A stretch of DNA of 64,000 nucleotides from Macrostomum lignano (lineage: Eukaryota), in NCBI GenBank assembly GCA_002269645.1, contig NIVC01001163.1, positions 124,001-188,000 on the forward strand. The letters run 5' to 3'. The notes under the pieces are model-generated. The model had not been told where the DNA came from. It did no database searches and saw only the letters and a program-made list of their open reading frames with translations. Positions 196 through 57,600 of this stretch are shown here, one piece after another. A program made the position numbers and the translations under genes. Positions within the stretch are counted from its first letter, which is position 1, and the number at the start of each line of letters is the position of its first letter.

Positions 196-1361
196 CTATC
201 CTGCAGCCTTCTCCATCAGCTCGGTGAGTTTGACTAATGTGTCTAATGGGGGATCTGGGAGCTTATGGTTTCTCCAGGCTTGCTTTGGAGGGGGGATTTC
301 GAATCCGTGGATGGCGTTAGCTATAACTTTTTGGTACCATTTGGTGGCTACCTTTTCTACCCTGGGCTTAACCATGGGTATGTTAGCTATTTTGTGCAGA
401 TAGTTGATTCTGGTGAATTTGGGGGTATTGTAGCAGAGTCTGAGGTTGGTGTTTTGGATATGCTGGAGTTTGGTAAAGTTGGTGCTTCCCATGGACAGGA
501 GAACTTGGGGGGCGTAGGTCATGTCACTCTCAATGTAAGCTCTGTACAGGAGTCTGAGGGTTCTGCTGGGGACCTTGGTTAGTCGGGCAATCCTCCTGAT
601 CTGAAAGGTTCTGACCTCGCATTTATTGTGTATCTTTTGGACGTGTTGGTTAAGGCTGAGGTTTCTGTCCAAGGTGACCCCAAGCTGGAATGTAACGGAG
701 TCTGTGTAGGGAATCTCTTCCCCATCGAGTTTAAGGGCTGGGGGTCGTGTCGAGGTCCGGATTTGCACCGATTGTCGTAGAATTTGACTGCCTGACTCTT
801 TTTGGCATTAACTTTGATGCCGTACTTCCCCAGCCAGGGTTGAAGGTTTTCTATGTATTTTTGGAGATGCCCTGCGGCATACTTGGGGCTAATAGACCTG
901 GCCCAAATGGCCATATCATCCGCATATTGACTAGTCTGGACGCAGGGACCCGAGGGTTTGGGCATCGTGCTAACATAGAGGTTAAAGAGGAGTGGGTTGA
1001 GGACCCCGCCCTGGGGGACCCCTGCCTGGGGGACGAAGACCTCACCCAGGCTCTCGCCCACCTTTACTATGATCCTTCTGTCATGCATGTAGCTGGATGT
1101 AATTCTGACTAGGGTACGTGGCATTTGTATTTCTGTGGTCCTGTGTCTGAGCATGTCATGCCTGACTGAGTCGAAGGCTGCCTCAACATCTAGGAATAGA
1201 CCCAAGTGTTTATAGTTTCTGTGTCTCTCTTCTTTGACATCTTGAACTAGTCGGAAAACATTGTCCGGGGCCCCGTGATAGGCGCGGTATGCACACTGGT
1301 TGCTGCCCAGGACCCCCTTCTCTTCCATCCACGGGATGAGTCTTTTTTTCTGGGCTGGCAT
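196..1361 (-). mobile_element. Non-LTR retrotransposon (LINE) reverse transcriptase, frameshifted near 745-790; no endonuclease or N-terminal RT subdomain recognisable upstream
   Basis: ORF 579-1361 has LINE RT motifs (NQCAYR, LFLDVEAAFDSV, GVPQGGVLNPLLF, QYADD). The thumb region (LGVTLDRNL, LYRAYIES, LQHIQN) continues in another frame (ORF 196-768). Confidence 0.92.
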
Positions 1362-1976
1362 CCCAGCGCGGTTTTATCCCCTGTTTTTATCTGGCCATAG
1401 TTGCCTCCAATTCTTCGGAGTTATGAGCTCTGCCCTCCCTGCCCGGTCCATCCTGCTCTGTCCTTGGTCCATCTGCTGGCTCCTCTGGTTGTCTCCCTGC
1501 CTAAGTGTCTCTGGCTCTCATCCTGACAGTGGATTGGTGTCCTGGGGAATGAGTTCGTCCCGAATCGGGGATACCGGCTGAGTTCGGGTCCTCTTGCTCC
1601 TTGTGCCCCTTCCTGACCCCTTGGCCTGGCCTCCAATATTGAGCTGGTTAGGTGACACCCTTGTGGCTTGCAGCCCTATAGGTAGTAGCAATATCCTGCC
1701 TGATAGGAGACTCGCCCTCGGAAACAAGCCTTCCAGACTCGCTCCAATAATTAAGCCATTTCCGTAGACTTCGGGGTTTCCCCGCTCTCGGACCGCTTTC
1801 AGTAGTAACCCAAGCTTTTTTCGCTTTTTCAATTTTTTTCTGCGCACTCCCGAAGATTTGTCTGCTGTGTGGTGGCCTGGGTGGACTCGGTCCTAGTACC
1901 GTCCCTGATTCCACTAATATTGGGTTGGCGGTGTCTTAGTCCATAAGGCTTGGGTTAGTAGCTCCAATACACCTTT

Positions 1977-9104: not shown

Positions 9105-12587
<3,483 letters not shown>

Positions 12588-13698
12588 CTTTGGCAGGTTT
12601 ATTATCTTCTGTTACGCTAATTTGCAATAAAAGTAGCAGAGGGACTGCGTGCTGCATCTATCAAAACAGAGTCACAAGCCAGTCAAAAAAGTATATATTT
12701 AGCCAATTTAAAACTATGAATAAGCTGAATGATTTGACTTATAGGCTTATCAACTTAAAATATTTAATATATGTAAAGTGTTTACATGCTAGTTTTTGTA
12801 ATAGGTTGCCAAAATGAAATAGGAAAAGTTTTTTTGATAGGATTTATAAAAATGGGATTTCAATAAAGGGTGCAGGACTAGCCAATACAAGCTTTATTGG
12901 AGACTCAGGGAGCCACTAATAGCCTTATCCCTATACAGCAATGTGCCATTATTTAAAATGCCTAGCTAGATCTAAAACCCTAATAATCTCTTATCTAAGA
13001 CTGCCAATGTCTATAAATACAATAAAGCCACAATGGACTTATAAAAAGAACATACAGTTCATTATACAATAAAATGGACACTCATTTTTGCTTAGTAAAA
13101 TTTGCTAAAACAACTAGCACATTAAGTCCCCTATAGTGGGCATTCAATTTCAAAATTCAAACATAAAAGTATTAAAAACATTGTTTTTTTAATTTACCCA
13201 TTTCCAAAATAAATCTTCAATGTTTAAAATTTTATATAAGCATATTAAGCCCCCTATGAGGGCATTCAAATTCAAAATTAAAACAATGAAAGCATTAAAA
13301 ATGTTTCTTAAATATTTGACAAATTTCCTATTGCAATTGGTATAAATTCTATTCTATATACATATTTGCCAACTGAATCTGAATTAATTAGGCCCATTAA
13401 CTACTGCCACCATTTGCAACTGCACCACTTTCTTTGTGTTGAAAATTAATATAAACAAGATTAAAGCAATTTAGATAGTTGATAAAAAGGCACATTGCAT
13501 TTCAGGCTAGGCCTAGCTTTATAATCCAACTCTCTTTCATCAATTGTCTATTAGACTAGTAAATAATAAAATTCAATTATTCAATCAACTCTATAAATTG
13601 CAAGTCTGCCAGGGTGCTAGTCACTTTGTCAACTAGTGTTTTGTCAAATGGTTGACAAAGTGACTACTTGCATTTAGCAGGGTTAGCAGTATTAGCTA

Positions 13699-16335: not shown

Positions 16336-18152
16336 ATATAGATAAAATTAGAATTATCAACATGACCTATAGACTTGAATGATAGCAGCTATTTCAATAA
16401 GCTGCCAGGGGATAAGCTAGAAATTATTGACATGGATCCATGTGGATAAAATTGGAACTAGGTCTATTGACATGGGACTATGAGGATAAGCACTTTCTTA
16501 TACATTGGCCAAGAAAAAGCTTGAATTCTTGAACTGAACAATTAAATTATTAAATTGAATGCCTAATAAAAGCATTATAAAATATCATTTTTCAAATATT
16601 TGACCTACTTTGAATTAAAATTCTTTATCAAAAAGTTCTTTATGATTGCCAAAGAATTATAATTTTTCAAAGTTAATTTAAAATAGGCCTAGCTAGATAA
16701 TTTTCAGAAAATCAAAGACATAGATAGTGACAAACAGCACAAAATTAAATATATAGATCTGCTCAAATTCTACTAAAAAATATGTAAAAAATTTGAGAGA
16801 TTTTGAGTCTTTTTGACTAACTATAGTATTAGTAGGCCCTATTATTATAGGCCTATAGATAGATACCACCAATAGACCATTTTTAGTAATACCAATAGTT
16901 TCATTTTTAGCTTTTACCTTGAAACTTTATCAAAAGAACAATAAATATATTTTTTATTGAATGGGTTAGGTTTTATTTCCATAGAATTAAATATACTAAT
17001 GAAACATCAACATGAAAGCAATAGGCCTAATCACTCAAAATAGGGGGGCCTAGTGATGTTTTGGATTGGGTGCCAACCCCAATGCAATACATTGCATATG
17101 CTGATATGCATATAATCTATAATGTTATACACACAATTCTTTGTTTAATATTTTTGGTCTACAAAAGGGAACTGGTTACTTCGGTGACAGGTTGGTTACT
17201 TCGGTGACAAGAGTATGGTGCGTACATTGTTTAAAGAACTAACTTATAAAGTCCGACCGAATTCGAAATCTCGATTGAAAATGAAACGCAATTCAATTTT
17301 GCGCCAAAAGAGGCATTGTTAAACGATTATTAAGCACTCAAAGGCCAAAAGGCATACAATGCTTCAGTTTCCATAACCACGTAGTGCCACCCGTTGAAGG
17401 TGCCGCCGGCGTCTGGATGACGACCGAATGCTTAAGAGACTAGCTGCATTATGATTACCTAGCAGTTGAGGATTGCCATACAACTCGACAAGCTTGAGAC
17501 GTAAGGCTCGATCCAGTCCGGAGGGGCTGGGGACTTGATTTTTGTTTGAGGAGAAGGTACGAAATGAAAAGTAAGCTTCATGTTCTTGAATTTCATTTGC
17601 CTGCGTTGCTCCTCCGTTCCGGTGCAGCAAAAATTGTCAGAAAGAGACTTCCCTTTAATTATAACATGTAGTATAGTTCGACGCCATCAACGGGCGGAAA
17701 ATGGCTTGCATTGGTACATGCATGTACTGTACATGTATTCCAACTGATTTATTAGTAGAAAATCCAAACAAATTAAGTTACCAAAGAAAATTTATTGAAA
17801 ATTGTAAGTCAAATTTCAATGAAAACAAGAATATAGTAAAAAAGTGTTGTGTATGCGGCTTGCACGCCGCCTAGAGGATCTTCTTGCGTTCTGATTGGCT
17901 GGGGTTTGTCTGTCTGCCCAGACCGGCCTAGGCCGGGTGGGGGGTTTGATGTTTGCTGAATCATGCTGGTTAGTAGTTTAACTATAAATAAGTAAGTGCG
18001 CACCGACCTTCCAAGCCTTTGTGACTTTTTCTACACTACAATTGCTTCTCGCATCAATTATTCATTTGGCCACGCTGCCTCAATGTACAACAGTAAGTGC
18101 GAGCGTATATTACATTTTCTGTCACAACTGTCATGCAATGATGGACTTGACT

Positions 18153-18329
18153 CAGTAGCGGATTTAGAGGGGGGTGGGCGCACAGGGCGCGCCCCGTTGA
18201 GTTTGATTTTTTGATTTTTTATATGGAAAATACACATTATCATATGTACATATACTTGTACATGATATGAATATATATGTAGCTTAGTAGTCTGCGCCCC
18301 CCGTTCAAAATTTTCTGGATCCCCTACTG
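18153..18329. mobile_element. 177-bp MITE with 8-bp TSD (hAT-type TSD length)
   Basis: Exact acttgact at 18145-18152 and 18330-18337. Termini cagtagcggat and atcccctactg are imperfect inverted repeats. Confidence 0.82.
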
Positions 18330-18772
18330 ACTTGACTCTGGATGTATACATGTACATGCTTACATCTTGTTGTTGTTTATCATCCAATCAAGGACGACAA
18401 CTTGATGCAACTTAATTGATGCCATCATTGCCTATATTTACATGTAACTGCCACTGTAATGGGCCAAGGACCACTTTAGCATATAACAGCGTATCTTTTA
18501 TCTCCACGGTGTATTTTTTCCAGGAAATTGGCCTCCAAAAATTACACGATCTTTGACTTTTATCTTACATCCTGTTATACTACTTTTAAATTGAACGGTA
18601 TTATACACACAATATGTTTTCAATAATGTTTTTATCAAAGACATGCAATAATCAACTCAAGAACTACTAGCAGTATCGCTGATAGCAGCACATATATATT
18701 GCTGCGATGGTGATATGGATTTTAACTATGAACTATTACGCATGCGATTGAACTATCTATGGTCATAATTCT

Positions 18773-19145
18773 GCTTCTTCATATTCGGGTCACGGACATT
18801 GTAGCTAGACGTAGCTAATAGGACCGGGTGCCTAGCACCATGCAGCCGGGGCGCTGACTCCGCGCGGGCGGACAGTAGACGACGGAATCCAATTTGCGGC
18901 CTGCGGCGGGTGGCCAGAGAGCGTGGGGACCCGAGTCCCGGTGCGCAGGGCTCCTCCGCAGACCGACTTACGCTGTAAAAACCGCCATCCACCGCCAACC
19001 CAGCAGTAGGGGACAACTCTCCCAGGCGGCATTACCCGGAGGTGAGACCAATTCGTCACCCCGTCGGTGACAGGGACGCACGAAGCTCCTGCCACATTGG
19101 TGGGGTATCCAGGGGCGCGACGTGGACGCTGGTCTCATGCCACCC
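18773..19145 (-). mobile_element. 373-bp SINE/SIDE-like retro-insertion with 14-bp TSD
   Basis: atggtcataattct at 18759-18772 and 19146-19159 brackets a GC-rich block in AT-rich DNA. The 3' end reads ...atgaagaagc. Confidence 0.85.
19044..19145 (-). ncRNA. HDV-like self-cleaving ribozyme at the 5' end of the SINE-like element
   Basis: P1 GGGUGGC/GCCCCU (U4 bulged, G1-U wobble); P2 GAGACCA/UGGUCUC (7/7); P3 GCG/CGC; L3 UCCACGU; P1.1 CC/GG; P4 UACCCC/GGGGUG; J4/2 ACGAA with candidate catalytic C at 19055. Confidence 0.8.
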
Positions 19146-19208
19146 ATGGTCATAATTCTCGAAGACCCAGCAGTTACTAAAGAGCTGGGAGCACGAGGGA
19201 AAATGGAA

Positions 19209-19300
19209 TCCATATACTAAAAATAAAAATCTTGTTTGTTTGTTTGTACGAAATCAATTATCTCCCAAAAGGCTCAACCGATTTTGTTCGAATTTGCACT
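19209..19300 (+). mobile_element. Possible Helitron-like 5' end fragment
   Basis: a|TCcatatactaaaaataaaaatcttgtttgtttgtttgt...atctcccaaaaggctcaaccgatttt resembles animal Helitron 5' termini. No matching 3' hairpin/CTAG was found. Confidence 0.35.
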
Positions 19301-19704
19301 GTTTGTTCGAGCGGAGCGAGACAAGGGCTCCTACGATAACGAACTATTTCCGCTCCTTTTTGTTAACACAAATATACGATCAGACGGAACGAACTGTCTT
19401 ACCAATATACATCACGTGGTCCTTGAATCAATAAAGAGATAAAGAGATTAGCGTAAAACAATTTTGGTTGTTCACATTGCATTGTTCCTCATTATAATTG
19501 GAATTTTTTAGAATTGGCTCGGGACCCATGAGAATGATGCCACTAAATTATGCAAAATGAGCATGCAATGCACATGTACATTACATGTCAATGACTACGC
19601 TCGTACTTAGAAAGAACGATGGAATACATGTAAGTCCTCCTTAGTACATGTACATATTATGAAGGTGATAGAAAAGCTTCGTACATGTCACGACTTAGTG
19701 TGAC

Positions 19705-19990
19705 TGCGGGCCAGAGGAGGGGAGAGAGGAGAAGGAATAGAGAATAGCAGAGACGAAAGATAAAAGATAGGAAAAAAGAGGCGAGCGCGAGAAGAGAGGA
19801 GACGAGAGGTTAGAAGAAATGGGAGAGAAGAGAGGAGAGAGGTTAGATGAAATAGAAGAGGAGAAAGGAGAGAAGGGGGAGAAGAGAGGAGAGGTTAGAT
19901 GAAATAGGAGAGGAGAAAAAGAGAAGGGAGAGGAGAGAGGAACGAAGAGAGGAGAGAGGTTAGAAGAGAAGAGAATGAGCGGAAGAGAGA
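19705..19990. repeat. Purine-rich (GA) low-complexity tract
   Basis: Nearly pyrimidine-free gagagga/agaga tract. Confidence 0.85.
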
Positions 19991-20775
19991 AGAGAGAAGA
20001 GACACAAACCTTTAAGGGGCCGGATTGCTATTGTGAAATTTCAATGGAGCCAAAGAGAGTTTTAAAGAGAGGCTTTGCTGGGGCCTGCTGGAGTCTGCCG
20101 ACCCGCGGCTTGGTGCTTCAATTAAGTGACAGCGGGGCATTTCTGCAAAAAAATCAACGCGTTTAGGCACGTTCTCTTCGCCAAGATGTAGCGGATACAA
20201 GTTGTTTGATCACGAAACTTGTAAATCAAATTTGATTCCTTTGTACATTGGTTATGCGATTTGGTGGCTCAGTTAGTGGCAGTGTAAATGAGCCTTTTGC
20301 AAAGCTTTCTGATACGCACACGGGGCTTAGGCAACATTGTGAGTATGCGTTACTGCAGCGCAACATAACATGCATGTGCGATCTTTGCGCCTTCTATATC
20401 TAAACCAGAAAATCCTTGCGTCAAGACTTATAGAATGCATCATAGTTGGCTATTCTTGCCAGAATTTTTTCTTTCATCTCAAAGAAGCAAAGGAAGCGGC
20501 AAGACTAACTACACGAAATAAATAGCGCCTGCTCAGCAAGCCTACAAAGTGACTGCCGTTTTGGGCCCATCTGGTTTGCAGCAGCTTTCCAGCGCTTATT
20601 TTCTGTTAAATTTGGCTGATAATTGCTTGGGGGACAGCGGACACAAAAAACACTACCGTTGCTGCTCAGAAATATGCTCTCCGCGGATAGAATAAGCAGT
20701 CTTTGATCGACTATTTATCCGTGCAGATTTTGTTTGATTTCTGCCATTCGCAGCTTTTTTCCAGCGAGCTATAAT

Positions 20776-22375: not shown

Positions 22376-23557
22376 ATAGACATCGCTTTGAGATGTGTTT
22401 TAGCTGTATTTGCCGTGGGTTACTGCGACTCAAATAATGGACAGTTGAATGAGTGCTTACGATCGAGCGTATAAAATACCTGTAACTACGGTTAAAAAGC
22501 TATAGTCTTTGTCATGTAATCTGTAAGTACGGTAATGGATAAATCAGTAGTACAGTGCATGGATTATCGCTCTGTGTTGTGCTTGGTTTCATAAATTGAA
22601 AGCAATATGGGGAGTCGGAATGATCAGTCAGTTAGGTACAAATGAACCTGTTTCTTAGGATAGGTAAAATTAATTGACACCATCCATGAACTGCTCATTC
22701 GTAAGAGATATTGCGATGAGGACCTATTTGAATTGATCAAAACTATTGACATCTGCGGATATGAAGACAAGCTGAACCTGTTAATAAAGGCGCTGTACAT
22801 TAAAGTGCACCGCTATTGGGGCATAGCAGGCCGTCTACTCAGTGTAGCTCGGAGTTGGCCGTTCGTTCCTTATGCTTTTCTTTGTTGATATAAATAGCAT
22901 TTATCTACCTTATCATGGTAGAGCGAGCCGCAGTTCCTGAACCAGCACTGCGGCTTAGAATGAAAGAGTCCAGTTACTTGCAGTAATGCAGTTACTTAAG
23001 TCCAAACGGCATCCTCCGTCTGATTTTCCTCTTTTTCCGTTGCTGCTTTTTATTGCCCCGCTTCTTCGACCCGCCGCCAGCTTGGTTGGCTGACGCGGTT
23101 GCGGTGGCAGCTGCTGCGTGAGCGGCTGCGGCCAACCGCCTGTGAATCTGTGAGTCCACCAGAGCGCCTGTGAAGGCCCGGCCTCGCCAGGTCACGGTGA
23201 CAACCAGGGGCAACCGCTGTCGCCACGCTGAGCATCCAGCCAGATTACGCCTTGCAGATGCACTCGGGTGCCAGGAGGCCGCGGAGTCGCTTCGTCGTGG
23301 ATTTCTGCCGGCTCGTCTGGGAGGCTGGAGCTGGTTGGTGTGGCGTCCTGTTGCGGATTGACGCTGTCGACACAAATACTTCTTGACTGCTGCTGCCACT
23401 GTTCGTTTTGCACCGTCTGGAAATATTTTGGGGTTTGAAAAGCCTACAGGTTATTGCAGTGCACTGAATTTGGGTCAGAACGAGCGCATCACTCTACTTA
23501 TAGGACTGGGAAGATTAGATTGCTCGAAAGGACCACTAGAAGTAACGCTAACTTCTA

Positions 23558-31526: not shown

Positions 31527-32970
31527 TCACTTTGGAATGGGTGGGAAGGCCGCTGAAATGAGATCGCCGGGTGGCTTGTCAGCTGTCAGCTTCATCCTAT
31601 GTCTATTCCCACTCTAGCTATCTCGTTTCCTTTATCTCTATTCCCTTATCTCTATTCTCACCCTATCTATCTCATTTCTCTAATCTCTTATCTCTATTCC
31701 CTTATCTCTATCCTCACCCTATCTATCCTATCTCCTTTCTCTTATCTCTATTCCTTTATCTCTATTCTCACCCTATCTATCTCATTTCTCTAATCTCTTA
31801 TATCTATTCCCTTATCTCTATTCTCACCCTATCTATCTCATTTCTCTAATCTCTTATCTCTATTCCCTTATCTCTATCCTCACCCTATCTATCCTATCTC
31901 CTATCTCTTATCTCTATTCCTTTATCTCTATTCTCACCCTATCTATCTCATTTCTCTAATCTCTTATATCTATTCCCTTATCTCTATTCTCACCCTATAT
32001 ATCTCATTTTTCTTATCTCCATTCTCACCCTATCATCTCCTTTCTCCTATCTCTATTCTCACCCTATATCTATCTCATCTCATTTCTCCTATCTCTATTC
32101 ACACCCTATCTATCTCATTTCTCCTATCCATCTCATTTCTTGATCTACCCTCATCACATGGACTCCATCAAAGTCTCAAGGAAGTGGCCAATAGCGGAGC
32201 TCATCCTAAAGCGGCATGATAAGCCATCGAAGATGTCAAAACTGCTCTCATACTGGGGGGAGAGGGGACGCCGGGCGGTGACCTCGAAGTCAAGTGGCCC
32301 CGCGGCAGCCGGGATTGGATTTGCCACTCGCATGTCCGGCTCCCGACCGCCTCCTCCCTCACATCCGGCCGCTCGCCCAGACACTGAGGCAGGCCGTCTG
32401 GAGGCTGGGTCGGGGCTGAGGCCCAACCAAATATAAGATGCAGACGGAGGAACTGAGAACAAGGCGGAAGCCCTCGCCGCGTTTGAGAGGGAGAGAGGGA
32501 AATCCCATTGAGGACTGATGCAGCTGCATCGATGCGGCTCTCGGGAGTCTGGGTGATGCAGAAGAGGCGATGTGGGAGGATGAAGAGGCCTCTGCAAAAA
32601 CTAGAAAGGGGAGGAGGGAGCCAGCAGCTTGCCGGGCAATCATGCGAGCATTAGGGAGAGACGGAGAGGGAGAGGTCTAAGAAGGCCTGCCATGCCCCCC
32701 CCCTAATCTCAGAGCGCTGAGCCGGAGTGAGGAGCGGAGAATGGGAAGCCTTGATGCCACCTCACACTCCCACTGTGACACGCATCCCAAAACCGCAGCA
32801 ATGCCTTACACAGAGGCAGTTGCAGCGCATTCAGTGAGAAGGCCTGTGTTTGTGTTTGCCGGGAGAAGTGATGAGGGAGCCCCGCTTCTGCAATGGAAAC
32901 TAAACAAGCAATCAATATCTCACAGAGTGAGTGAGAGCTGGGGATGAGCGCTGCGGGTGGTTCGGCTGCT

Positions 32971-33040
<70 letters not shown>

Positions 33041-33042
33041 GT

Positions 33043-33080
<38 letters not shown>

Positions 33081-33492
33081 GCTGTCTCACCGTGGTGAAA
33101 CCCGCCAACAAAGCCAGCAAACGGGTCGGCTGGGTACGGGGCTGGCGGGGGACCAGGCGGCAGAAACTGCGGCGGCGGCGGCTGCGGAGCCCCACTGCCA
33201 GTGCTGGCCGAGGAGCCGCCACCAATGGGAAATCCGGTCCCCGCGGAGGAAGAGACGGCGGCAGCGGCAGCCGCGGCCGCGGCGAAGGCGGCCTCCATAA
33301 AGCGGAGCTGCTCGAGCTCGTACAGCTTTCTGGGGTCGGCGGGAGGCCAGTAGAGCTGATGGGGCGGGAGCGGCGGCTGCGGCTGCGGCGGCTGAGGAAG
33401 GAGGCTGGCCACAGATGTTGGTGGGGGATCAGCCTTTGGCGACTGTGGAGGCGGCGGGGGCGGCGGGGGTGCCATGGTAGTTCCGATGCACG

Positions 33493-33530
<38 letters not shown>

Positions 33531-36500
33531 GGATTCTTGGACCCGCCGGCCTCCCGCTGCTGCTGCTGACGCTTCGCTGCAGCCGAAACCGCTGGCTTCC
33601 GCTGCTCGGGGACTTTGAACACGGGGTGCGGATCGGCGCCCCCCTGAGGACTCGACGATGCCGTCGATGGCGTCTGCGGATCTGCAAGCGGTTGCGGAGG
33701 TGGCGGTGGCGGGCGCCTGCGTTCCGAGTGACAGTCGTTGTGGTGCCACTTCATGGCCAGCTCGTTGATGAATCGCTTGGAGCAGTCGGGATGAGGACAA
33801 GAGACTGGGAGAAGCTGCTGCTTGGTGGCAGCGCGGCTGTGCTGCGGCTGCTGCTGCGGCTGCGAGCGCCTCCGGTTGATGATGGCCCCGTTGGAGGCGG
33901 CGGCGGCCGCTGCTGCGGCTCGACGCTTTCGTCCAGTTGACGGAGGTGAAGATCGGTGAGTCTTCTGCTGCTGCTCTGCCTGCTGCTCCTGGCACTCCTG
34001 CTGCTGCTGCTGCTGTGCGCTTGGCTCAGAAGAGACCAGGTCGCGCTGAGACGAGTCTAGCAGGGTGCCAACGTAGGTTCGACCGCGCCAGGTGACGTTA
34101 ACGACTAGCATGCCTGCAGTGCCAGATGCGAGATGAGCATGGGTGAGATGAGTATGGGTGAGGTGAGTATGGGTGAGATGAGCATGGGTGAGATGAGCAT
34201 GGGTGAGATGAGCATGGGTGAGATGAGTATGGGTGAGATGAGCATGGGTGAGATGAGTATGGGTGAGGTGAGTATGGGTGAGATGAGTATGGGTGAGATG
34301 AGTATGGTGAGGTGAGTATGGGTGAGATGAGTATGGGTGAGATGAGTATGGTGAGGTGAGCATGGGTGAGATGAGTATGGTGAGGTGAGCATGGGTGAGA
34401 TGAGTATGGGTGAGATGAATGGGGTGAGATGAGTGTGGTGAGATGAGTGGGGTGAGATGAATGGGGTGAGATGAGTGTGGTGAGATGAGTGGGGTGAGAT
34501 GAATGGGGTGAGATGAGTGGGGTGAGATGAGTGGGGTGAGATGAGTGGGGTGAGATGAATGGGGTGAGATGAGTGGGGTGAGATGAATGGGGTGAGATGA
34601 GTGGGGTGAGATGAGTGGGGTTGAGATGAGTGGGGTGAGATGAGTGGGGTGAGATGAGTGGGGTGAGATGAGTGGGGTTGAGATGAGTGGGGTGAGATGA
34701 GTGGGGTGAGATGAGTGAGATGAGATGAGTCAATGGTGATGGCCGATCAGGGGCCAGAGGAAATCGAGTTATTCAACCAGAATCGCCTAGCCGGCCACAT
34801 GGGCCTCAGCGGAAGGGTTGCAAGATCGGCAAGCAGCGCAAAGAGCCCCCCCCCCCGGCTGACAGCGCATTCGATATCAGACTAATCTGTGCCCCGGTGC
34901 ACCGATCGATAAGAGGGCCTGCGCACCCACCAGTGCTGTCAATGTGGAAACCATGTTTTAACTCCTTAACTTGCTTCAACTACCGCCCGGTGTGTTATCG
35001 CGGCCAGGCAGCAACCCCCTCCGCCTCCCGCCTCTGCAGGAGGTCGTAAATAATTAATTAGGGCGCGCTGAGCCGACAACAGATTAAGATGCAGACAGCG
35101 ACGAGAGGGAGGAAGTTAGGGAGGTAGCCAGGGCCTCTCAAGCAGGTATTGGTGGAGGCGCAAGTGCTTGCTAAACGAATTTGCTGCGCCGTCGGCCGGT
35201 TGGTGAAGTTGCATTTGGATTGACTTTTAGCGCTTACCAGTGCGCAAGATCAGAGCTGGATTCAAATTATTGCCTGCCAGCTTAGTTTAGTTTAGAGAGG
35301 AAAGGAGATTAATGATACTCTGGCAGACACTGAGAGAGACACTGAGAGAGACATTGAGACAGACACTGAGACAGACACTGAGACAGACACTGAGGCAGAC
35401 ACTGAGACAGACACTGAGACAGACACTGAGACAGACACTGAGACAGACACTGAGACAGACACTGAGACAGACACTGAGACAGGCACTGAGACAGACATGA
35501 GACAGGCACTGAGACAGACACTGAGACAGACACTGAGACAGACACTGAGACAGACACTGAGACAGACATGAGACAGGCACTGAGACAGACACTGAGACAG
35601 ACACTGAGACAGACACTGAGACAGACACTGAGACAGACACTGAGACAGACATGAGACAGGCACTGAGACAGACATTGAGACAGACACTGAGACAGACACT
35701 GAGACAGACACTGAGACAGACACTGAGACAGACACTGAGACAGACATTGAGACAGACACTGAGACAGACACTGAGACAGACACTGAGACAGACACTGAGA
35801 CAGACACTGAGACACACACTGAGACAGACACTGAGACAGACACTGAAACAGACACTGAAACAGACACTGAGACAGACACTGAGACAGACACTGAGACACA
35901 CACTGAGACAGACACTGAGACAGACACTGAGACAGACATTGAGACAGACACTGAGACAGACACTGAGACAGACACTGAGGCAGACACTGAGACAGACACT
36001 GAGACAGACACTGAGACAGACACCGAGACAGACACTGAGACAGACATTGAGACAGACACTGAGACAGACACTGAGACAGACACTGAGGCAGACACTGAGA
36101 CAGACACTGAGACAGACACTGAGACAGACACTGAGACAGACACTGAGACAGACACTGAGACAGGCACTGAGACAGACATGAGACAGGCACTGAGACAGAC
36201 ACTGAGACAGACACTGAGACAGACACTGAGACAGACACTGAGACAGACACTGAGACAGACACTGAGACAGACATGAGACAGGCACTGAGACAGACACTGA
36301 GACAGACACTGAGACAGACACTGAGACAGACACTGAGACAGACACTGAGACAGACATGAGACAGGCACTGAGACAGACATTGAGACAGACACTGAGACAG
36401 ACACTGAGACAGACACTGAGACAGACACTGAGACAGACACTGAGACAGACATTGAGACAGACACTGAGACAGACACTGAGACAGACATGAGACAGGCACT

Positions 36501-51639: not shown

Positions 51640-54600
51640 TCAGAAGTCCTCGGCATAGGAGCCGGGAAAGATGCCCCTGTTGCCGGAGGAGTCCTCGCCG
51701 AGCCACCAGCCGTCGGCGCACTTCTCCAGCACGCTGACGACGTCGCCCTCGCGCAGGCTGAGCTCGTCATCGCCTGTGGCTGGATAGTCGAACAGGGCGC
51801 GGGCCCAGCCGCAAACTCGAACAGCTGCGTCCGCTGCATCAACCGACTCAGCTTCAGCTGGCGATTCTGACTCCGGCTCCTCAGCCGTGGTGCTCAGCTG
51901 AGTCGGGTGCGGGGGCGGCAGCGGAGCGCGCTGGCGCCGGGCGGAGGTCGGTGGCGCGGTGTCCGAAGCTTGGCACTGCGGCAAGTCCAGCTGTGCGTAG
52001 GTCGGATCGTCCAGATCGTCAGCGCTGTCGGTCAGGTGTCGGCAATTCAACAGTCCGCCGGATGCAGCCTCTCGACTGACATCGTCAGCACCGTAGTCGC
52101 GAAGGTCCGGCAGAGCGGCCGCGCCGGCGGAGGCGGCCGTGGCGTGGCCGGCTGCAGTGGAGGAGTTGTTGGAAGAATCAGCTGACTGAGCAGAGGAGGC
52201 GCGGCGCAGGGCTGGCGCCAGCCGGAGCACCGTCTGCGGCATCCCCAGGCGGTCCTTGCTGCGCTCCAGACAGTGCGCCAGGCTGAACACCGGCCTGCAG
52301 GGCGGCGGCGACCCGGCCAGGGCGTGCAGCGCCAGCTCCTGCTTGTAGCGGGAGGCCTCCAGGAACAGCAGGGTGGAGCTGATGCTGGCCAGCTTGGAGG
52401 CCGCCTCGTGCTGCGATGCTGCCTCGGCGAAGCCCGGACTGCTGCTGTACACCTGCGGAGAGTGGCGCCGGGTTGATTATAGTAGTAATTCACTTTAATG
52501 GCTACTTCCAGTAGGAAAATGCCAGCAAAAATTAAGAAAGCCAGTCACATATTCAAACTAGTGTATCGCCAGCCACAGATATGATCGATTCACATTAATT
52601 TTGATGAAAAGCCATTGATATAATTTTGTTTTACGTTAATATTAAAAGCATTAATATTACCTATTTACGTTAACTTGGATAGAACCATCAATATCAGTGT
52701 TTTAGTTGTCCCTGACAATTAAAATTATCAATTTATTATCAATATTATCAATTAACGTTAACTTTGATAAAACCGTTAATATTATCGATTTACGTTAACT
52801 TTGATAAAACCATCAATATTATCGATTTACGTTAACTTTGATAAAACCATTAATATTATCGATTTACGTTAACTTTGATAAAACCAGTAATATTATCGAT
52901 TTACGTTAACTTTGATAAAACCATTAATATTATCGATTTACGTTAACTTTGATAAAAACATTAATATTATCGATTTACGTTAACTTTGATAAAACCATTA
53001 ATATTATCGATTTACGTTAACTTTGATAAAAACATTAATTTTATCGATTTACGTTAACTTTGATAAAACCATTAATATTATCGATTTACGTTAACTTTAA
53101 TAAAACCATTAATATTATCGATTTACGTTAACTTCAAAAGCAACCAAGATAAACAATAGAATCGATAAAAAATAACACAATAAATATCGAAAGCAGACCC
53201 GCTCACCTGAATCAACTTTTCCACTCCCTCTCTGCCCTTAATCTCCCGCTCAATGTCAGCGCAGATCATGGCAGTGTAGGACCTCAGCGCGGTCTCCCTG
53301 CGGCAGCGGTCCATCGGATTATTTAAATCTTCGGCGTAGCTCTCGAACAGCAGCTGCTCGCTGGCCTGCAGCAGGGCGCCGCGCTGCTCAACCACGGTGC
53401 CAATGTCAGCCTCGATGTCTGCGCCCGAGAGGCAGCGGTGCAGTCGGCCGCTGAGCTGGGCGTAGGCCGGCGCCAGCTGGTCCACCCGGCGCTGGTAGCG
53501 CTCCAGCATCTCGTGCGTCTGGCGCAGTCGGTCAGTTTCCAGAGCCTGCAGCTGCTCCGAGCCCTGGGGGGGGGGGAATGGGGATATTTGGCGTCCACTG
53601 ACTTTTCTTCAGTTGATTTAACACCTAACATTTCTAACATTTCTAAGGGGATCGTCACATGAACCTAGCGTGATCTGCAGATAGTCAAATTATCCTTGAG
53701 ATCTCCAGACTCTTGATGATTCTTTAAATTGTAAGTGGTCACGTGACGTGTCGATTTAATTGTAATCAAAAGTGGTCACGTGACCCCTGTTGATTCGATT
53801 TGATTCTATTCTAAAAGTGGTCACGTGACCCCTGTTGATTCAATTCAATTTCTTAAAGTGGTCACGTGACCCCTGTCGATTCGATTCTATTTCTTAAAGT
53901 GGTTACGTGACCCCTGTCGATTCGATTCCATTCAATTTCTAAAAGTGATCACGTGACCCCTGTTGATTCGATTCCATTCTATTTCTTAAAGTGGTCACGT
54001 GACCCCTGTCGATTCGATTCTATTTCTTAGTGGTTACGTGACCCCTGTCGATTCGATTCCATTCAATTTCTAAAAGTGATCACGTGACCCCTGTTGATTC
54101 GATTCCATTCAATTTCTAAAAGTGGTCACGTGACCCCTGTTGATTCGATTCCATTCAATTTCTAAAAGTGATCACGTGACCCCTGTTGATTCGATTCCAT
54201 TCAATTTCTAAAAGTGGTCACGTGACCCCTGTCGATTCGATCCCAATTCAATTTCTAAAAGTGGTTACGTGACCCCTGTCAATTCAGTTTCTAAAGGTCA
54301 TGTGACCTTAATTGGTTCGTTTTGCAACGGGGTCGCGTGACCCATTTAAATTTTGATTCTCCAAGGTCACTTGACTAATCTAGATTGGATTTATTTTAAG
54401 GGTCACACAGCTCTATGCAAACGGCCCCCATAAAAAACCAAGGCACGCAGGTAAGTATAAATAAGTCTCGGCTCACCTTAGCAACGGTGCTCTCCCAGTC
54501 GAGTCTGGCCAGCTCGGCTCGCAGACAGGCGTCATAATAATCCTTGTCGCATTTGGACATGCTCGCCTGGCATGCGCGACACTTCTTCTCTTGCTGTACG

Positions 54601-57600
54601 GATTGGGCGACATAGGGATTTAGCATTGGCAACATCGGTTTTGGAATCGGGATCAGGGGATTTAGAATCGGGATCAGGGGATTTAGAATCGGGATCTGGG
54701 GATTTAGAATCGGGATCAGGGGGTTTAGAATCGGGATCTGGGGATTTAGAATCGGGATCAGGGGATTTAGAATCGGGATCAGGGGATTTAGAATCGGGAT
54801 CAGGGGATTTAGAATCGGGATCAGGGGATTTAGAATCGGGATGGGACAATGGAATTACAGATCAACCAACCTTAGATGCGTCCTTATCAGCCTTGGCGTC
54901 CCCGTTGCTGCTGCCTCCGCCGCCGCTTCCTTTCTTGCCAATCTGTGCATCCGACAAAGAGTCCCAAGCCTTCTCGGCCTCCTTAGCCGAACAGTAGGCC
55001 TTCTTCTTCGCCGTAGCCTCCTCCGCCCTCTTCTCCAACAGGGTCCGGATGGATTTCTCCACCTGCACTTCGATGGGCTTGCGCGACTTGTGAAACGATT
55101 CATTTAGCTCTCGCATTGGCTTGGTGACCTCGTCTGACAAGTTGGCGGCGAATTCCTGCCGGATCTCCGCCTCGCGCTTGATCGACTCGCCGATGGAGCC
55201 CCAGGATGCGGCCACGGTGCTGCGGGAATTGCGGTCGATTCCATTTTGTTAGAATGCTTGGAATTTTGACATGGATTACATGATCCTGAACATGGATTAC
55301 ATGATCCTGAACATGGATTACATGATCCTGAACATGGATTACATGATCCTGAACATGGATTACATGATCCTAAACATAGATTACATGATCCTGAACATGG
55401 ATTACATGATCCTGAACATGGATTACATGATCCTAAACATAGATTACATGATCCTGAACATGGATTACATGATCCTGAATATGGATTACATGATCCTGAA
55501 CATGGATTACATGATCCTGAATATGGATTACATGATCTTGGATAGGGATTACATGATCCTAAACATAGATTACATGATCCTGAACATGGATTACATGATC
55601 CTGAATATGGATTACATGATCTTGGATAGGGATTACATGATCCTAAACATGGATTACATGATCTTGAATAGGGATTACATGAGTTTGAATAGGGATTACA
55701 TGAGTTTGAATATGGATCACATGATTCTGAATCGGGGATTACATGATTCTAAACATGGATTACATGATCTTGAATAGGGATTACATGAGTTTGAATAGGG
55801 ATTACATGAGTTTGAATATGGATCACATGATTCTGAATCGGGGATTACATGATTCTGAATCTTGGTGTACATGATCTGGAATCCGGATGAAATGATAAAC
55901 ATGATGCAGTCTCTCGAATTAAATCAGATTAACAGCATCAAAATGCAAAAGCCCCATCAATAAGGCTGGTTTCACACAGACAGACTTACAGCAATTACAG
56001 ACGCAGTTTCTAGGGAAAATTTATGCAGGAGTTGGGATCTTGCTCTAGGTCTGCACAGGGCGGCGCACAGGGAAGTGCAAGAAGCAACTAATCAATCGAT
56101 AGGCTCGCTGCACTCCCGCCAGCCTCTTCCTTCTGCCCTCGCGCCATTTCGTCCCTCATCAGGAGCGAGCATACTAAACCCTCTACTAATATATATTACA
56201 CTATTATATATTATATACTCAAGTTCGGTCCGAAACTCTTCATCGCAGATGCCAGAGGGAAGAAGCAGATGAGCTGGACTTTAAAGCAATCAAAATAAGC
56301 CGCTATCTGCCTGCGCATTCCCTATTAGGTTGCAGCAGCCTCCGCAGCTCCCTCTCATTTAAGAGACCGATTCGGACTAAGCTATGGAACACAATCTATA
56401 AGACTAAAGAAAACTGTAGCAAGGAAATAGAGGTGAGATAAAGGAGTAAAGATAAAGAGAAGGGAGAAGGGAGAGAGGGAAGAGGGAGAAGCGAAAAGGG
56501 AGGGAGAAGAGAGAAGGGAGGGGAGAAGGGAAGGGAGAAAGGAAGAAGGGAAGGGAAAGGGAGAAAGAAAAGGAGAAAGGAGAAGGGAGAAAGGAGAGAG
56601 GGAAGGGGGAGAAGCGAGAAGGGAAGGGAGAAGAGAGAAGGGAAGGGAGAAGAGAGAAGGGAAGGGAGAAGGGAAGGGAAGGAAGAAGGGAAGGGAGAAG
56701 GGAGAAGGCAAAGGAGAAGGGAAGGGAGAAGGGAGAAGGCAAGGGAGAAGGCAAGGGAGAAGGGAAGGGAGAAGGGAGAAGGCAAGGGAGAAGGGAAGGG
56801 AGAAGGGAGAAGGCAAGGGAGAAGGGAAGGGAGAAGGGAGAAGGCAAAGGAGAAGGAAAGGGAGAAGGGAGAAGGCAAGGGAGAAGGGAAGGGAGAAGGC
56901 AAGGGAGAAGGGAAGGGAGAAGGGAGAAGGCAAGGGAGAAGGGAGGGGAGAAGGGAGAAGGCAAGGGAGAAGGGAGAAGGCAAAGGAGAAGGGAAGGGAG
57001 AAGGGAGAAGGGAAGGGAGAAGGGAGAAGGGAAGGGAGAAGGGAGAAGGGAAGGGAGAAGGGAGAAGGCAAAGGAGAAGGGAAGGGAGAAGGGAGAAGGG
57101 AAGGGAGAAGGGAAGGGAGAAGGGAGAAGGCAAGGGAGAAGGGAAGGGAGAAGGGAAGGGAGAAGGGAGAAGAGAAGGAAGAAAGGGAGAAAAACCAAAA
57201 GCCAAGAAGCTTCAGAGACCAGAGCATACAAGCATGCCAACTCTGTCACACATTAAATGTGGCTCACCCAGCGCAGGTTGCAGCCACCTTGGCCATTCGC
57301 TGGCTAATTTTAACCAGACTCCGCGCATAGTGGTGCTCCAGTTCGCACCTCTCAACCAGGATGGCCGAGAGCTCCTTGCACAGGTCATTGCCCTGCTTGA
57401 TGTAGCGCTTCAGCTCGTCAAAGCCGTTCGTGCCCTGCAGTTGAGGGTGAGTCGGCTCTCATGGAGATTCTCGGATACTGGGCAATTGGATCTCTACCTG
57501 TCCTAAACTATGCTATGTCAAATCTCAAAATCTCACTCTTGATTGTATCAAATCTCAAAATCTCACTATTGATTGTATCAAATCTCAAAATCTCACTCTT

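What the first reader, a model, noticed from the sequence alone, without database searches (positions are those of the whole stretch)
18759..19159. SINE-like element headed by an HDV-like ribozyme whose cleavage site is exactly the element's 5' end
Seen: a 14-bp TSD. The first base inside (19145) is G1 of a nested double pseudoknot with HDV-like spacing: P2 10-16, P3 17-19, U20/C21/C22, G25, GG for P1.1, J4/2 ACGAA, and a perfect 7-bp P2. P1' is one base short, so U4 bulges, and a competing GUCACC/GGUGAC hairpin could sequester the catalytic C. Known: HDV-like ribozymes process the 5' ends of R2, RTE and L1Tc elements and their short non-autonomous derivatives. Inference: a ribozyme-headed non-autonomous retroelement family with no tRNA head, possibly undescribed in this lineage.
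Basis: partly seen in the sequence, partly recalled or inferred. Interest (0 to 1): 0.85.

Follow-up and report, generated by a model that had tools for sequence, protein, structure and literature searches.

The report
Ribozyme-headed short retroelement in a flatworm
A 373-base insertion in the flatworm Macrostomum lignano begins exactly at the predicted cutting site of an HDV-like self-cleaving RNA; this is a known way for short, non-coding relatives of LINE retrotransposons to trim their own front end, here seen in an animal where I found no earlier report of it.

Summary
On the minus strand, a perfect 14-bp duplication (18759-18772 and 19146-19159) brackets a 373-bp block of 64% GC in 36-38% GC DNA. 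The first 102 nt fit the HDV-like nested double pseudoknot. G1 of that fold is 19145, the first base inside the duplication. The Rfam HDV model aligns end to end and puts G1 on the same base, but scores 22 bits against a gathering score of 50. My own pseudoknot descriptor finds only this site in the window, against about 0.007 expected from shuffles.

The window is Macrostomum lignano. A second, roughly 97-98% identical assembly copy carries the same insertion.

The element has no ORF, no tRNA, 5S or 7SL head, no A or B boxes and no poly(A). It has an internal T5 run. The best reading is a short internally deleted, "bipartite" non-autonomous LINE derivative. Its template RNA was cut from a longer transcript by the ribozyme and copied by a partner LINE.

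- **Not shown:** that it is a family (one locus in about 136 kb examined), the partner LINE, covariation, and cleavage by this copy.
- **Deviation:** P1 is 6 bp with a bulged U4.

It is a new member of a known kind, of moderate to low interest.

The parts
19146..19159 (-). Target-site duplication, upstream copy (AGAATTATGACCAT on the element strand)
   Evidence: 14/14 direct repeat. The next base inside is G and the next base after the other copy is A, so the 5' boundary is unambiguous.
19044..19145 (-). HDV-like ribozyme fold, 102 nt; G1 = 19145
   Evidence: Rfam RF00094 global alignment, 22 bits. It is the only descriptor hit in the window, against 0.007 expected. The native nested fold is -31.8 kcal/mol plus a P2 duplex of -9.9, against a non-native MFE of -38.7.
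19139..19145 (-). P1 5' strand GGGUGGC (n1-7); U4 (19142) bulged
   Evidence: Read from the sequence. The descriptor reports 'bulge5_4'.
19111..19116 (-). P1 3' strand GCCCCU (n30-35), one base short of a 7-bp partner (GCCACCU)
   Evidence: Read from the sequence. The single-base-deletion reading is inference.
19130..19136 (-). P2 5' strand GAGACCA (n10-16)
   Evidence: Seven Watson-Crick pairs with 19044-19050; duplex -9.9 kcal/mol.
19044..19050 (-). P2 3' strand UGGUCUC (n96-102)
19117..19129 (-). P3 (GCG/CGC) with L3 UCCACGU (U20, C21, C22, G25)
   Evidence: The stretch AGCGUCCACGUCGCGCC also aligns to the CPEB3 model RF00622, partial, 11.6 bits.
19109..19110 (-). P1.1 G36 G37, pairing with C22 and C21 (19124, 19125)
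   Evidence: Read from the sequence; required by the descriptor.
19057..19107 (-). P4, a long irregular helix (base UACCCC/GGGGUG, inner stem GUGGCAGG/CCUGUCAC)
   Evidence: Folds alone to -23.1 kcal/mol.
19051..19056 (-). J4/2 ACGAAU with the candidate catalytic C91 = 19055
   Evidence: Aligned to GGCuAAu of RF00094; numbering.
18773..19043 (-). Non-coding body and tail of the element, 271 nt, 63.5% GC
   Evidence: No Pfam hit in any ORF. Fold z-score -1.97. No similarity elsewhere in the window.
18977..18981 (-). T5 run in the sense strand (n165-169), a Pol III terminator-type signal
18802..18817 (-). Hairpin near the 3' end, UAGCUA-CGUC-UAGCUA (n329-344); candidate recognition site for the partner reverse transcriptase
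   Evidence: Read from the sequence and present in the MFE. The function is inferred.
18759..18772 (-). Target-site duplication, downstream copy

Best explanation
This is a 373-bp, ORF-less, non-autonomous non-LTR retroelement in Macrostomum lignano, of the 'short internally deleted / bipartite non-autonomous LINE' type.

Proposed mechanism:

1. A source copy is transcribed as part of a longer transcript. This is probably Pol II read-through or an unknown internal promoter.
2. [quoted passage not shown]
3. The 3' part, which includes a hairpin about 30 nt from the end, is recognised in trans by the reverse transcriptase of a partner LINE.
4. Target-primed reverse transcription at a staggered nick copies the RNA to its very 5' end and produces the 14-bp duplication.

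Shown here: the duplication, the compositional island, the fold, and the identity of the DNA 5' end with the predicted cleavage site. Inferred: the transcription mode, the partner, the role of the 3' hairpin, and cleavage itself.

The bulged U4 is most simply explained by loss of one A from a GCCACCU partner strand. This copy may therefore be a weakened or dead relic of an active master.
For: - **Insertion:** a perfect 14-bp duplication arises rarely by chance, 25 of 20000 shuffles. GC jumps from 36-38% to 64% exactly at its edges.
- **Fold:** the Rfam HDV model aligns over its full length and places G1 on 19145. The independent descriptor has a single hit in the window, against about 0.007 expected. 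P2 differs from the HDV consensus on both strands yet keeps 7 perfect pairs.
- **Energy:** the native fold is energetically competitive with the best non-native fold.
- **No coding or Pol III features:** no ORF with a Pfam match, no tRNA, no other Rfam family, no A or B boxes, an internal T5 run, and no poly(A).
- **Real genomic DNA:** the same insertion is in two diverged assembly copies of the locus.
- **Precedent:** ribozyme-plus-3'-end derivatives are known for R2, RTE and ingi/L1Tc (PMC3414825, PMC5786205, PMC3383444). Natural HDV-like ribozymes have 6- or 7-bp P1 helices and P2 helices of about 7 bp (PMC4908430).
Against: - **Only one insertion locus was found.** There is no second copy in the window, in about 72 kb of other M. 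lignano loci, or in the metagenome, prokaryote-genome and viral collections. Element ORFs have no relatives among predicted proteins.
- **No partner LINE.** The only LINE fragment in the window (196-1900, minus strand) shares nothing with the element.
- **Sub-threshold score.** The Rfam score is well below gathering (22 against 50).
- **Fold weaknesses.** P1 has a bulge, untested in what I read. J4/2 is one nucleotide longer than in HDV. A -10.4 kcal/mol hairpin can sequester C91.
- **No empty site was recovered**.
Confidence: 0.6

Rival explanations
1. This is a one-off retrocopy of a cellular RNA, not a transposon family. On this reading a host transcript carries an HDV-like ribozyme, as the mammalian CPEB3 intron does. 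Its 3' cleavage product was reverse-transcribed once by a LINE enzyme acting in trans.
For: Only one locus was seen. The P3-L3-P1' stretch is nearly identical to the CPEB3 consensus. The 5' end at G1 is explained equally well.
Against: There is no poly(A) tail or poly(A) signal, no coding or intron-like features, and no source locus is known. Ribozyme plus a structured 3' end is the architecture expected of a non-autonomous LINE derivative (PMC3414825).
Confidence: 0.15
2. This is a retro-copied unit of a ribozyme-bearing small circular or tandem RNA. That could be a retrozyme-like element using an HDV-like motif in place of a hammerhead, or an endogenised fragment of a delta-like agent.
For: The sequence is GC-rich and somewhat over-structured (z = -1.97). 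The 5' end lies at a cleavage site. The fold resembles the viral HDV model over its whole length.
Against: There is no second ribozyme on either strand, no delta-antigen or other protein match, and no tandem arrangement. It is a single unit with a 14-bp duplication. The fold is only marginally better than shuffles (7 of 200 fold as well).
Confidence: 0.06
3. This copy is a dead relic. The fold is real by descent, but the U4 bulge, the longer J4/2 and the competing hairpin make this particular copy unable to cleave.
For: P1' is exactly one base short of a perfect partner. The non-native MFE of -38.7 kcal/mol includes the hairpin that buries C91. The insertion predates the split of two roughly 97-98% identical loci, so there was time for decay.
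Against: The element is 100% identical in both loci, where about 3 differences would be expected (P about 0.05, weak). P4 forms before the competing 3' arm is transcribed, which is inference. 6-bp P1 helices occur naturally (PMC4908430).
Confidence: 0.4
4. The direct repeat and the fold coincide by chance.
For: The Rfam score is below gathering. The window is rich in repeats.
Against: Descriptor expectation is about 0.007 per window. Repeat chance is about 0.001. The two features coincide to the base, and there is a sharp GC boundary.
Confidence: 0.02

Closest known systems
R2 SIDEs and R2/R1 hybrid SIDEs of Drosophila (Eickbush and Eickbush 2012, PMC3414825)
   Same: A short ORF-less element made of a 5' HDV-like ribozyme joined to a LINE 3' end. 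The 5' end is defined by self-cleavage. The hybrid SIDEs even have 14-bp duplications.
   Different: SIDEs insert at fixed sites in 28S rDNA and are co-transcribed with rRNA. This element sits in AT-rich non-rDNA sequence about 6 kb upstream of a TENT4/PAPD5-like gene. Its partner is unknown.
Bipartite ORF-absent non-autonomous LINEs of the RTE, Ingi/Vingi and R2 clades (Kojima 2018, PMC5786205); NARTc of Trypanosoma cruzi (PMC3383444)
   Same: These retain the LINE's own 5' end, including its ribozyme, together with its 3' end. They have no small-RNA head and are presumed to be Pol II transcripts.
   Different: Here neither the partner clade nor the copy number is known. The L1Tc/NARTc ribozyme also doubles as the Pr77 promoter, which was not tested here.
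HDV and CPEB3 ribozymes (Rfam RF00094, RF00622)
   Same: The same nested double-pseudoknot layout. Many core nucleotides are identical: GGCAUG after P1, UCC...CG in L3, CGAAU in J4/2, and AGCGUxCACGUCGCG as in CPEB3.
   Different: Scores are below both gathering thresholds. P1 is 6 bp with a bulged U. L3 is 7 nt, as in CPEB3 and not 8 as in HDV. J4/2 is one nucleotide longer. P4 is much longer, at 51 nt.
Perere-3 (RTE-clade LINE) of Schistosoma mansoni with 5' twister-variant ribozymes (PMC8501958)
   Same: A flatworm non-LTR element with an APE-type, non-site-specific insertion, a duplication, and a 5' self-cleaving ribozyme.
   Different: It uses a different ribozyme class (twister, not HDV-like) and is an autonomous element.

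Membership tests
HDV-like self-cleaving ribozyme | P1 helix of 6-7 bp starting at the cleavage-site nucleotide, closed by G1-U | tested here: inconclusive
   G1-U35 plus 5 G-C pairs are present, but U4 must bulge. 6- or 7-bp P1 helices are normal (PMC4908430). I found no data on a bulged P1.
HDV-like self-cleaving ribozyme | P2 pseudoknot helix of about 7 bp formed with the 3' end | tested here: met
   GAGACCA/UGGUCUC, 7 Watson-Crick pairs, -9.9 kcal/mol. It differs from the HDV consensus on both strands.
HDV-like self-cleaving ribozyme | 3-bp P3 capped by L3, whose two C residues form P1.1 with GG after P1 | tested here: met
   GCG/CGC; L3 is UCCACGU; C21 and C22 pair with G37 and G36.
HDV-like self-cleaving ribozyme | P4 helix followed by J4/2 carrying the catalytic C | tested here: met
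   P4 39-89 folds to -23.1 kcal/mol. J4/2 is ACGAAU, with C91 aligned to the model's C. The catalytic role is inferred.
HDV-like self-cleaving ribozyme | Reaches the gathering score of an Rfam HDV-type model | tested here: not met
   RF00094 scores 22 bits against 50. RF00622 scores 11.6 against 35, partial. Nothing reaches gathering. These models are built from narrow sets (the viral ribozyme, mammalian CPEB3); that is my own knowledge.
HDV-like self-cleaving ribozyme | Mg2+-dependent self-cleavage 5' of G1 | not testable with these tools
   There is indirect support only: the DNA copy starts exactly at G1.
Bipartite non-autonomous LINE / SIDE | Target-site duplication and no ORF | tested here: met
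   A 14-bp duplication. No Pfam hit in any of the six ORFs that overlap the element.
Bipartite non-autonomous LINE / SIDE | 5' and 3' ends shared with an autonomous LINE | tested here: inconclusive
   The only LINE fragment at hand (window 196-1900, minus strand) shares nothing with the element. The genome could not be searched.
Bipartite non-autonomous LINE / SIDE | Multiple dispersed copies with independent duplications | tested here: inconclusive
   One locus in about 136 kb of M. lignano DNA. The public collections that could be scanned do not contain this genome.
SINE (Pol III small-RNA head) | tRNA, 5S or 7SL-derived head with A and B boxes | tested here: not met
   ARAGORN finds nothing. 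There are no such Rfam hits. There are no A or B boxes, and a T5 run lies mid-element.
Delta-like agent (endogenised fragment) | Second ribozyme of opposite polarity and a delta-antigen ORF | tested here: not met
   One HDV-type hit only, on one strand. No Pfam match.

The most novel reading that the evidence does not exclude
This could be the founding example of an undescribed family of HDV-like-ribozyme-headed, ORF-less retroelements in free-living flatworms. Its ribozyme would cleave despite a bulged 6-bp P1, which would widen the accepted P1 rules for this ribozyme class. It would also show that different flatworm lineages recruited different ribozymes for LINE 5' processing: HDV-like here, twister in Schistosoma.
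Probability: 0.25. Interest if true: 0.5.

Novelty: new member of a known kind. Interest (0 to 1): 0.38.

Why it matters
The mechanism itself has been established since 2010-2012: HDV-like ribozymes trim the 5' ends of non-LTR retrotransposons and their short derivatives. This case adds three things.

- It is a clean example in Macrostomum lignano, a regeneration and transgenesis model flatworm for which I found no ribozyme report.
- It is a natural P1 variant, 6 bp plus a bulged U, that would be worth a cleavage assay.
- It gives a concrete seed for annotating a possible retroelement family and its partner LINE in a repeat-rich genome.

The exact match between the DNA 5' end and the predicted cleavage site works as a natural experiment. 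It argues that the template RNA was cut by the ribozyme in vivo.

Tried and rejected
- **Rfam at gathering thresholds on the window:** no hits.
- **Other copies in the window:** blastn with word size 7 found none.
- **Exact-product look-ups** of two element ORFs, the window's RT ORF and two host ORFs: none on record.
- **Homology search with an element ORF:** no candidates.
- **Homology search with a short host exon:** too weak to name the host.
- **RT search:** two distant hits only, and the contig of the better one carried only the RT gene.
- **Metagenome scan** with a degenerate core pattern: two hits, both a chance match inside a bacterial coding gene from TARA samples, with no HDV fold.
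- **Prokaryote-genome and viral-contig scans** with 5' and 3' patterns: nothing.
- **Literature search** for the core sequence string: nothing.
- **Empty site in the third, 90-94% identical paralogous locus:** homology breaks 63 bp from the insertion, against unrelated sequence at the edge of the fetched DNA, so no empty site was obtained.
- **Two further M. lignano loci fetched at random:** no copy and no other HDV-like site.
- **Excess conservation of the element between the two assembly copies:** 0 differences where about 3 were expected, so not significant.
- **Pol III SINE reading:** rejected.
- **Delta-agent reading:** disfavoured.
- **Positive controls:** the descriptor's controls were the standard short HDV and CPEB3 ribozyme sequences. 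I supplied them from my own knowledge, not from a tool.

Full report
**What is in the sequence.**
Read on the minus strand, the interval holds a perfect 14-bp direct repeat, AGAATTATGACCAT. On the + strand this is ATGGTCATAATTCT at 18759-18772 and 19146-19159. The repeat brackets a 373-bp block, 19145 down to 18773. The repeat cannot be extended at either end, so the element's first base is unambiguously the G at 19145. The block is 63.8% GC, and the 500-nt flanks are 36-38% GC. A direct repeat of at least 14 nt within 600 nt arose in only 25 of 20000 shuffles of 18500-19400. The element occurs once in the window.

**The ribozyme fold.**
Position n on the element is window 19146-n.

| Part | Positions | Sequence and pairing |
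|---|---|---|
| P1 | 1-7 with 30-35 | GGGUGGC with GCCCCU; G1-U35 wobble, five G-C pairs, U4 bulged |
| J1/2 | 8-9 | AU |
| P2 | 10-16 with 96-102 | GAGACCA with UGGUCUC; seven Watson-Crick pairs |
| P3 | 17-19 with 27-29 | GCG with CGC |
| L3 | 20-26 | UCCACGU, with U20, C21, C22 and G25 |
| P1.1 | 36-37 with 22-21 | G36 and G37 with C22 and C21 |
| P4 | 39-89 | long helix |
| J4/2 | 90-95 | ACGAAU; C91 = 19055 |

- **Rfam.** At permissive thresholds the HDV model RF00094 aligns over its whole length (1-89 of 89) to 19147-19043 (-). The score is 22 bits, with E=0.64 for this 521-nt search against 4227 families. Model position 3, the G after the cleavage site, lies on 19145. A partial match to CPEB3 (RF00622, 11.6 bits) covers the P3-L3 stretch. 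Neither reaches its gathering score, and the default Rfam scan is empty.
- **Descriptor.** The covariance models ignore the pseudoknots, so I wrote a descriptor that demands P1, P2, P3, L3, P1.1, a P4 base and a C-N-R-A J4/2. It accepts an HDV control and a CPEB3 control. It finds exactly one site in the 64-kb window on both strands, with G1=19145 and C=19055. It found two sites in 300 block-wise dinucleotide shuffles of the whole window, an expectation of about 0.007.
- **Coincidence.** A fold this rare sits with its cleavage site on the very first base inside a duplication that is itself rare. That is not chance.

**Energetics.**
- P4 alone folds to -23.1 kcal/mol as a long irregular helix.
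- The nested native part (P1+P3+P4) is -31.8 kcal/mol, and the P2 duplex adds about -9.9.
- The best pseudoknot-free alternative is -38.7 kcal/mol. It contains the GUCACC/GGUGAC hairpin (-10.4) that buries C91.

The native fold is therefore competitive but not dominant. The 5' arm of the competing hairpin is already part of the inner P4 stem before its 3' arm is made. Co-transcriptional folding should therefore favour the native P4; this is inference.

**Deviations from the canon.**
- P1' is one base short. GCCCCU is GCCACCU minus the A, so a single-base deletion would explain the bulged U4; this is inference.
- J4/2 has one extra U.
- Natural HDV-like ribozymes have 6- or 7-bp P1 helices and P2 helices of about 7 bp (PMC4908430). 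I found nothing on a bulged P1.

**The rest of the element.**
- Nucleotides 103-373 have no Pfam match in any ORF.
- There is no tRNA and no other Rfam family.
- There are no A or B boxes, no poly(A) signal and no A-tail.
- A T5 run at n165-169 would tend to stop Pol III.
- A hairpin, UAGCUA-CGUC-UAGCUA, lies about 30 nt from the 3' end.
- The body folds only slightly better than shuffles (z = -1.97).

**Host and locus.**
A host exon at 12117-12587 (-) is 99% identical to a Macrostomum lignano polynucleotide adenylyltransferase (UniRef A0A1I8HAY9; the same 90%-identity cluster holds NCBI PAA71477.1, PAA79540.1 and PAA52073.1). Contig NIVC01001163.1 is identical to the window across the 3-kb stretch compared, window 17500-20500, which includes the element. 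A second contig, NIVC01000629.1, is 98.2% identical over those 3 kb and about 95-97% identical over the 10 kb upstream of the gene. It carries the same 373 bp with both duplications, with no difference in the element. About 3 differences would be expected at the flanking rate, so this is only weakly suggestive.

The insertion therefore predates the split of these two copies and is real genomic DNA. A third, 90-94% identical paralogue loses homology 63 bp from the insertion, so no empty site was recovered.

**Was a family shown?**
No. No second locus was found by any of these routes:
- the window;
- 72 kb of other M. lignano loci;
- the metagenome, prokaryote-genome and viral collections;
- predicted proteins.

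None of the scannable DNA collections holds this genome, so absence there says little. The only LINE fragment at hand (RVT_1, window 196-1900 minus strand) is unrelated to the element.

**Interpretation.**
The best-supported reading is a non-autonomous non-LTR retroelement built from a LINE-type 5' ribozyme and a 3' recognition region.
1. The template RNA was released from a longer transcript by self-cleavage.
2. It was then copied to its very 5' end by target-primed reverse transcription.
3. That reaction left a 14-bp duplication.

This is the architecture of R2 SIDEs and R2/R1 hybrid SIDEs (PMC3414825), of NARTc (PMC3383444), and of the "bipartite ORF-absent non-autonomous LINEs" of the RTE, Ingi/Vingi and R2 clades (PMC5786205). 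"SINE-like" is acceptable only in the loose sense, because nothing points to Pol III.

The rivals are these:
- a single retrocopy of a cellular ribozyme-cleaved RNA, which cannot be excluded with one locus;
- a retrozyme-like or delta-like RNA, disfavoured because there is no second ribozyme, no antigen ORF and no tandem structure;
- chance, which is effectively excluded.

Whether this particular copy still cleaves is open.

**Novelty.**
The kind is known. The host lineage appears new. The library holds no paper on ribozymes in Macrostomum. The flatworm LINE whose 5' ribozyme has been studied, Perere-3 of Schistosoma mansoni, uses twister variants (PMC8501958). I rate it a new member of a known kind, with moderate to low interest.

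Noticed in passing
window 196-1900 (-): A degraded non-LTR retrotransposon fragment: Pfam RVT_1 at E=3.6e-27 on ORF 579-1361, with a frameshifted continuation at 196-768. Its closest database relative is only 48% identical. It is unrelated to the ribozyme element and has no HDV-like site at its 5' side.
   Followed up: partly
window 9500-12050: Large minisatellite arrays fill the introns of the TENT4/PAPD5-like gene, whose exons lie near 12117-12611 and 11400-11610 on the minus strand. Similar arrays dominate much of the window, for example 5.6-9.9 kb, 20.7-22.4 kb, 23.8-24.2 kb, 26.2-27.1 kb, 46.8-49.9 kb and 56.4-61 kb.
   Followed up: no
window 32912-34363 (-) and 22995-23450 (-): The Pfam 'Pentapeptide' hit (E=1.9e-11) is an artefact of a THLTH low-complexity run. 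The same ORF contains a real-looking exon with VTWRGRxYxGTLLD and a C2H2-type [10 protein letters not shown]...H motif. A similar VTWRGRAFTGALVD motif occurs at 22995-23450, suggesting two related exons or paralogues.
   Followed up: no
window 51643-55248 (-): Exons of a gene that looks like an F-BAR plus C-terminal SH3 protein by eye ([21 protein letters not shown]...[10 protein letters not shown] at the end). This was not verified with a family search.
   Followed up: no
L008 1-346 (NIVC01003305.1): The third paralogous locus loses homology to the window at window 18696, 63 bp from the insertion. The replacing sequence ends in a short ORF tail, NVAQLRHAIENAWQQLLQDFLRRASS*, that looks like the C-terminus of a transposase. 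This was not tested. It blocked recovery of an empty site.
   Followed up: partly
L006 vs L007 (NIVC01001163.1 vs NIVC01000629.1): Two assembly copies of the whole locus are about 95-98% identical depending on the stretch, and a third is 90-94% identical. This suggests that the region is present in several copies in the M. lignano assembly. The element is identical in the two closest copies.
   Followed up: partly
window 18908-18914 (element n232-238): GCCACCC, a perfect 7-nt complement of the P1 5' strand GGGUGGC, lies far downstream in the element body. It could compete with P1 in the full-length RNA, or it could be coincidence.
   Followed up: no
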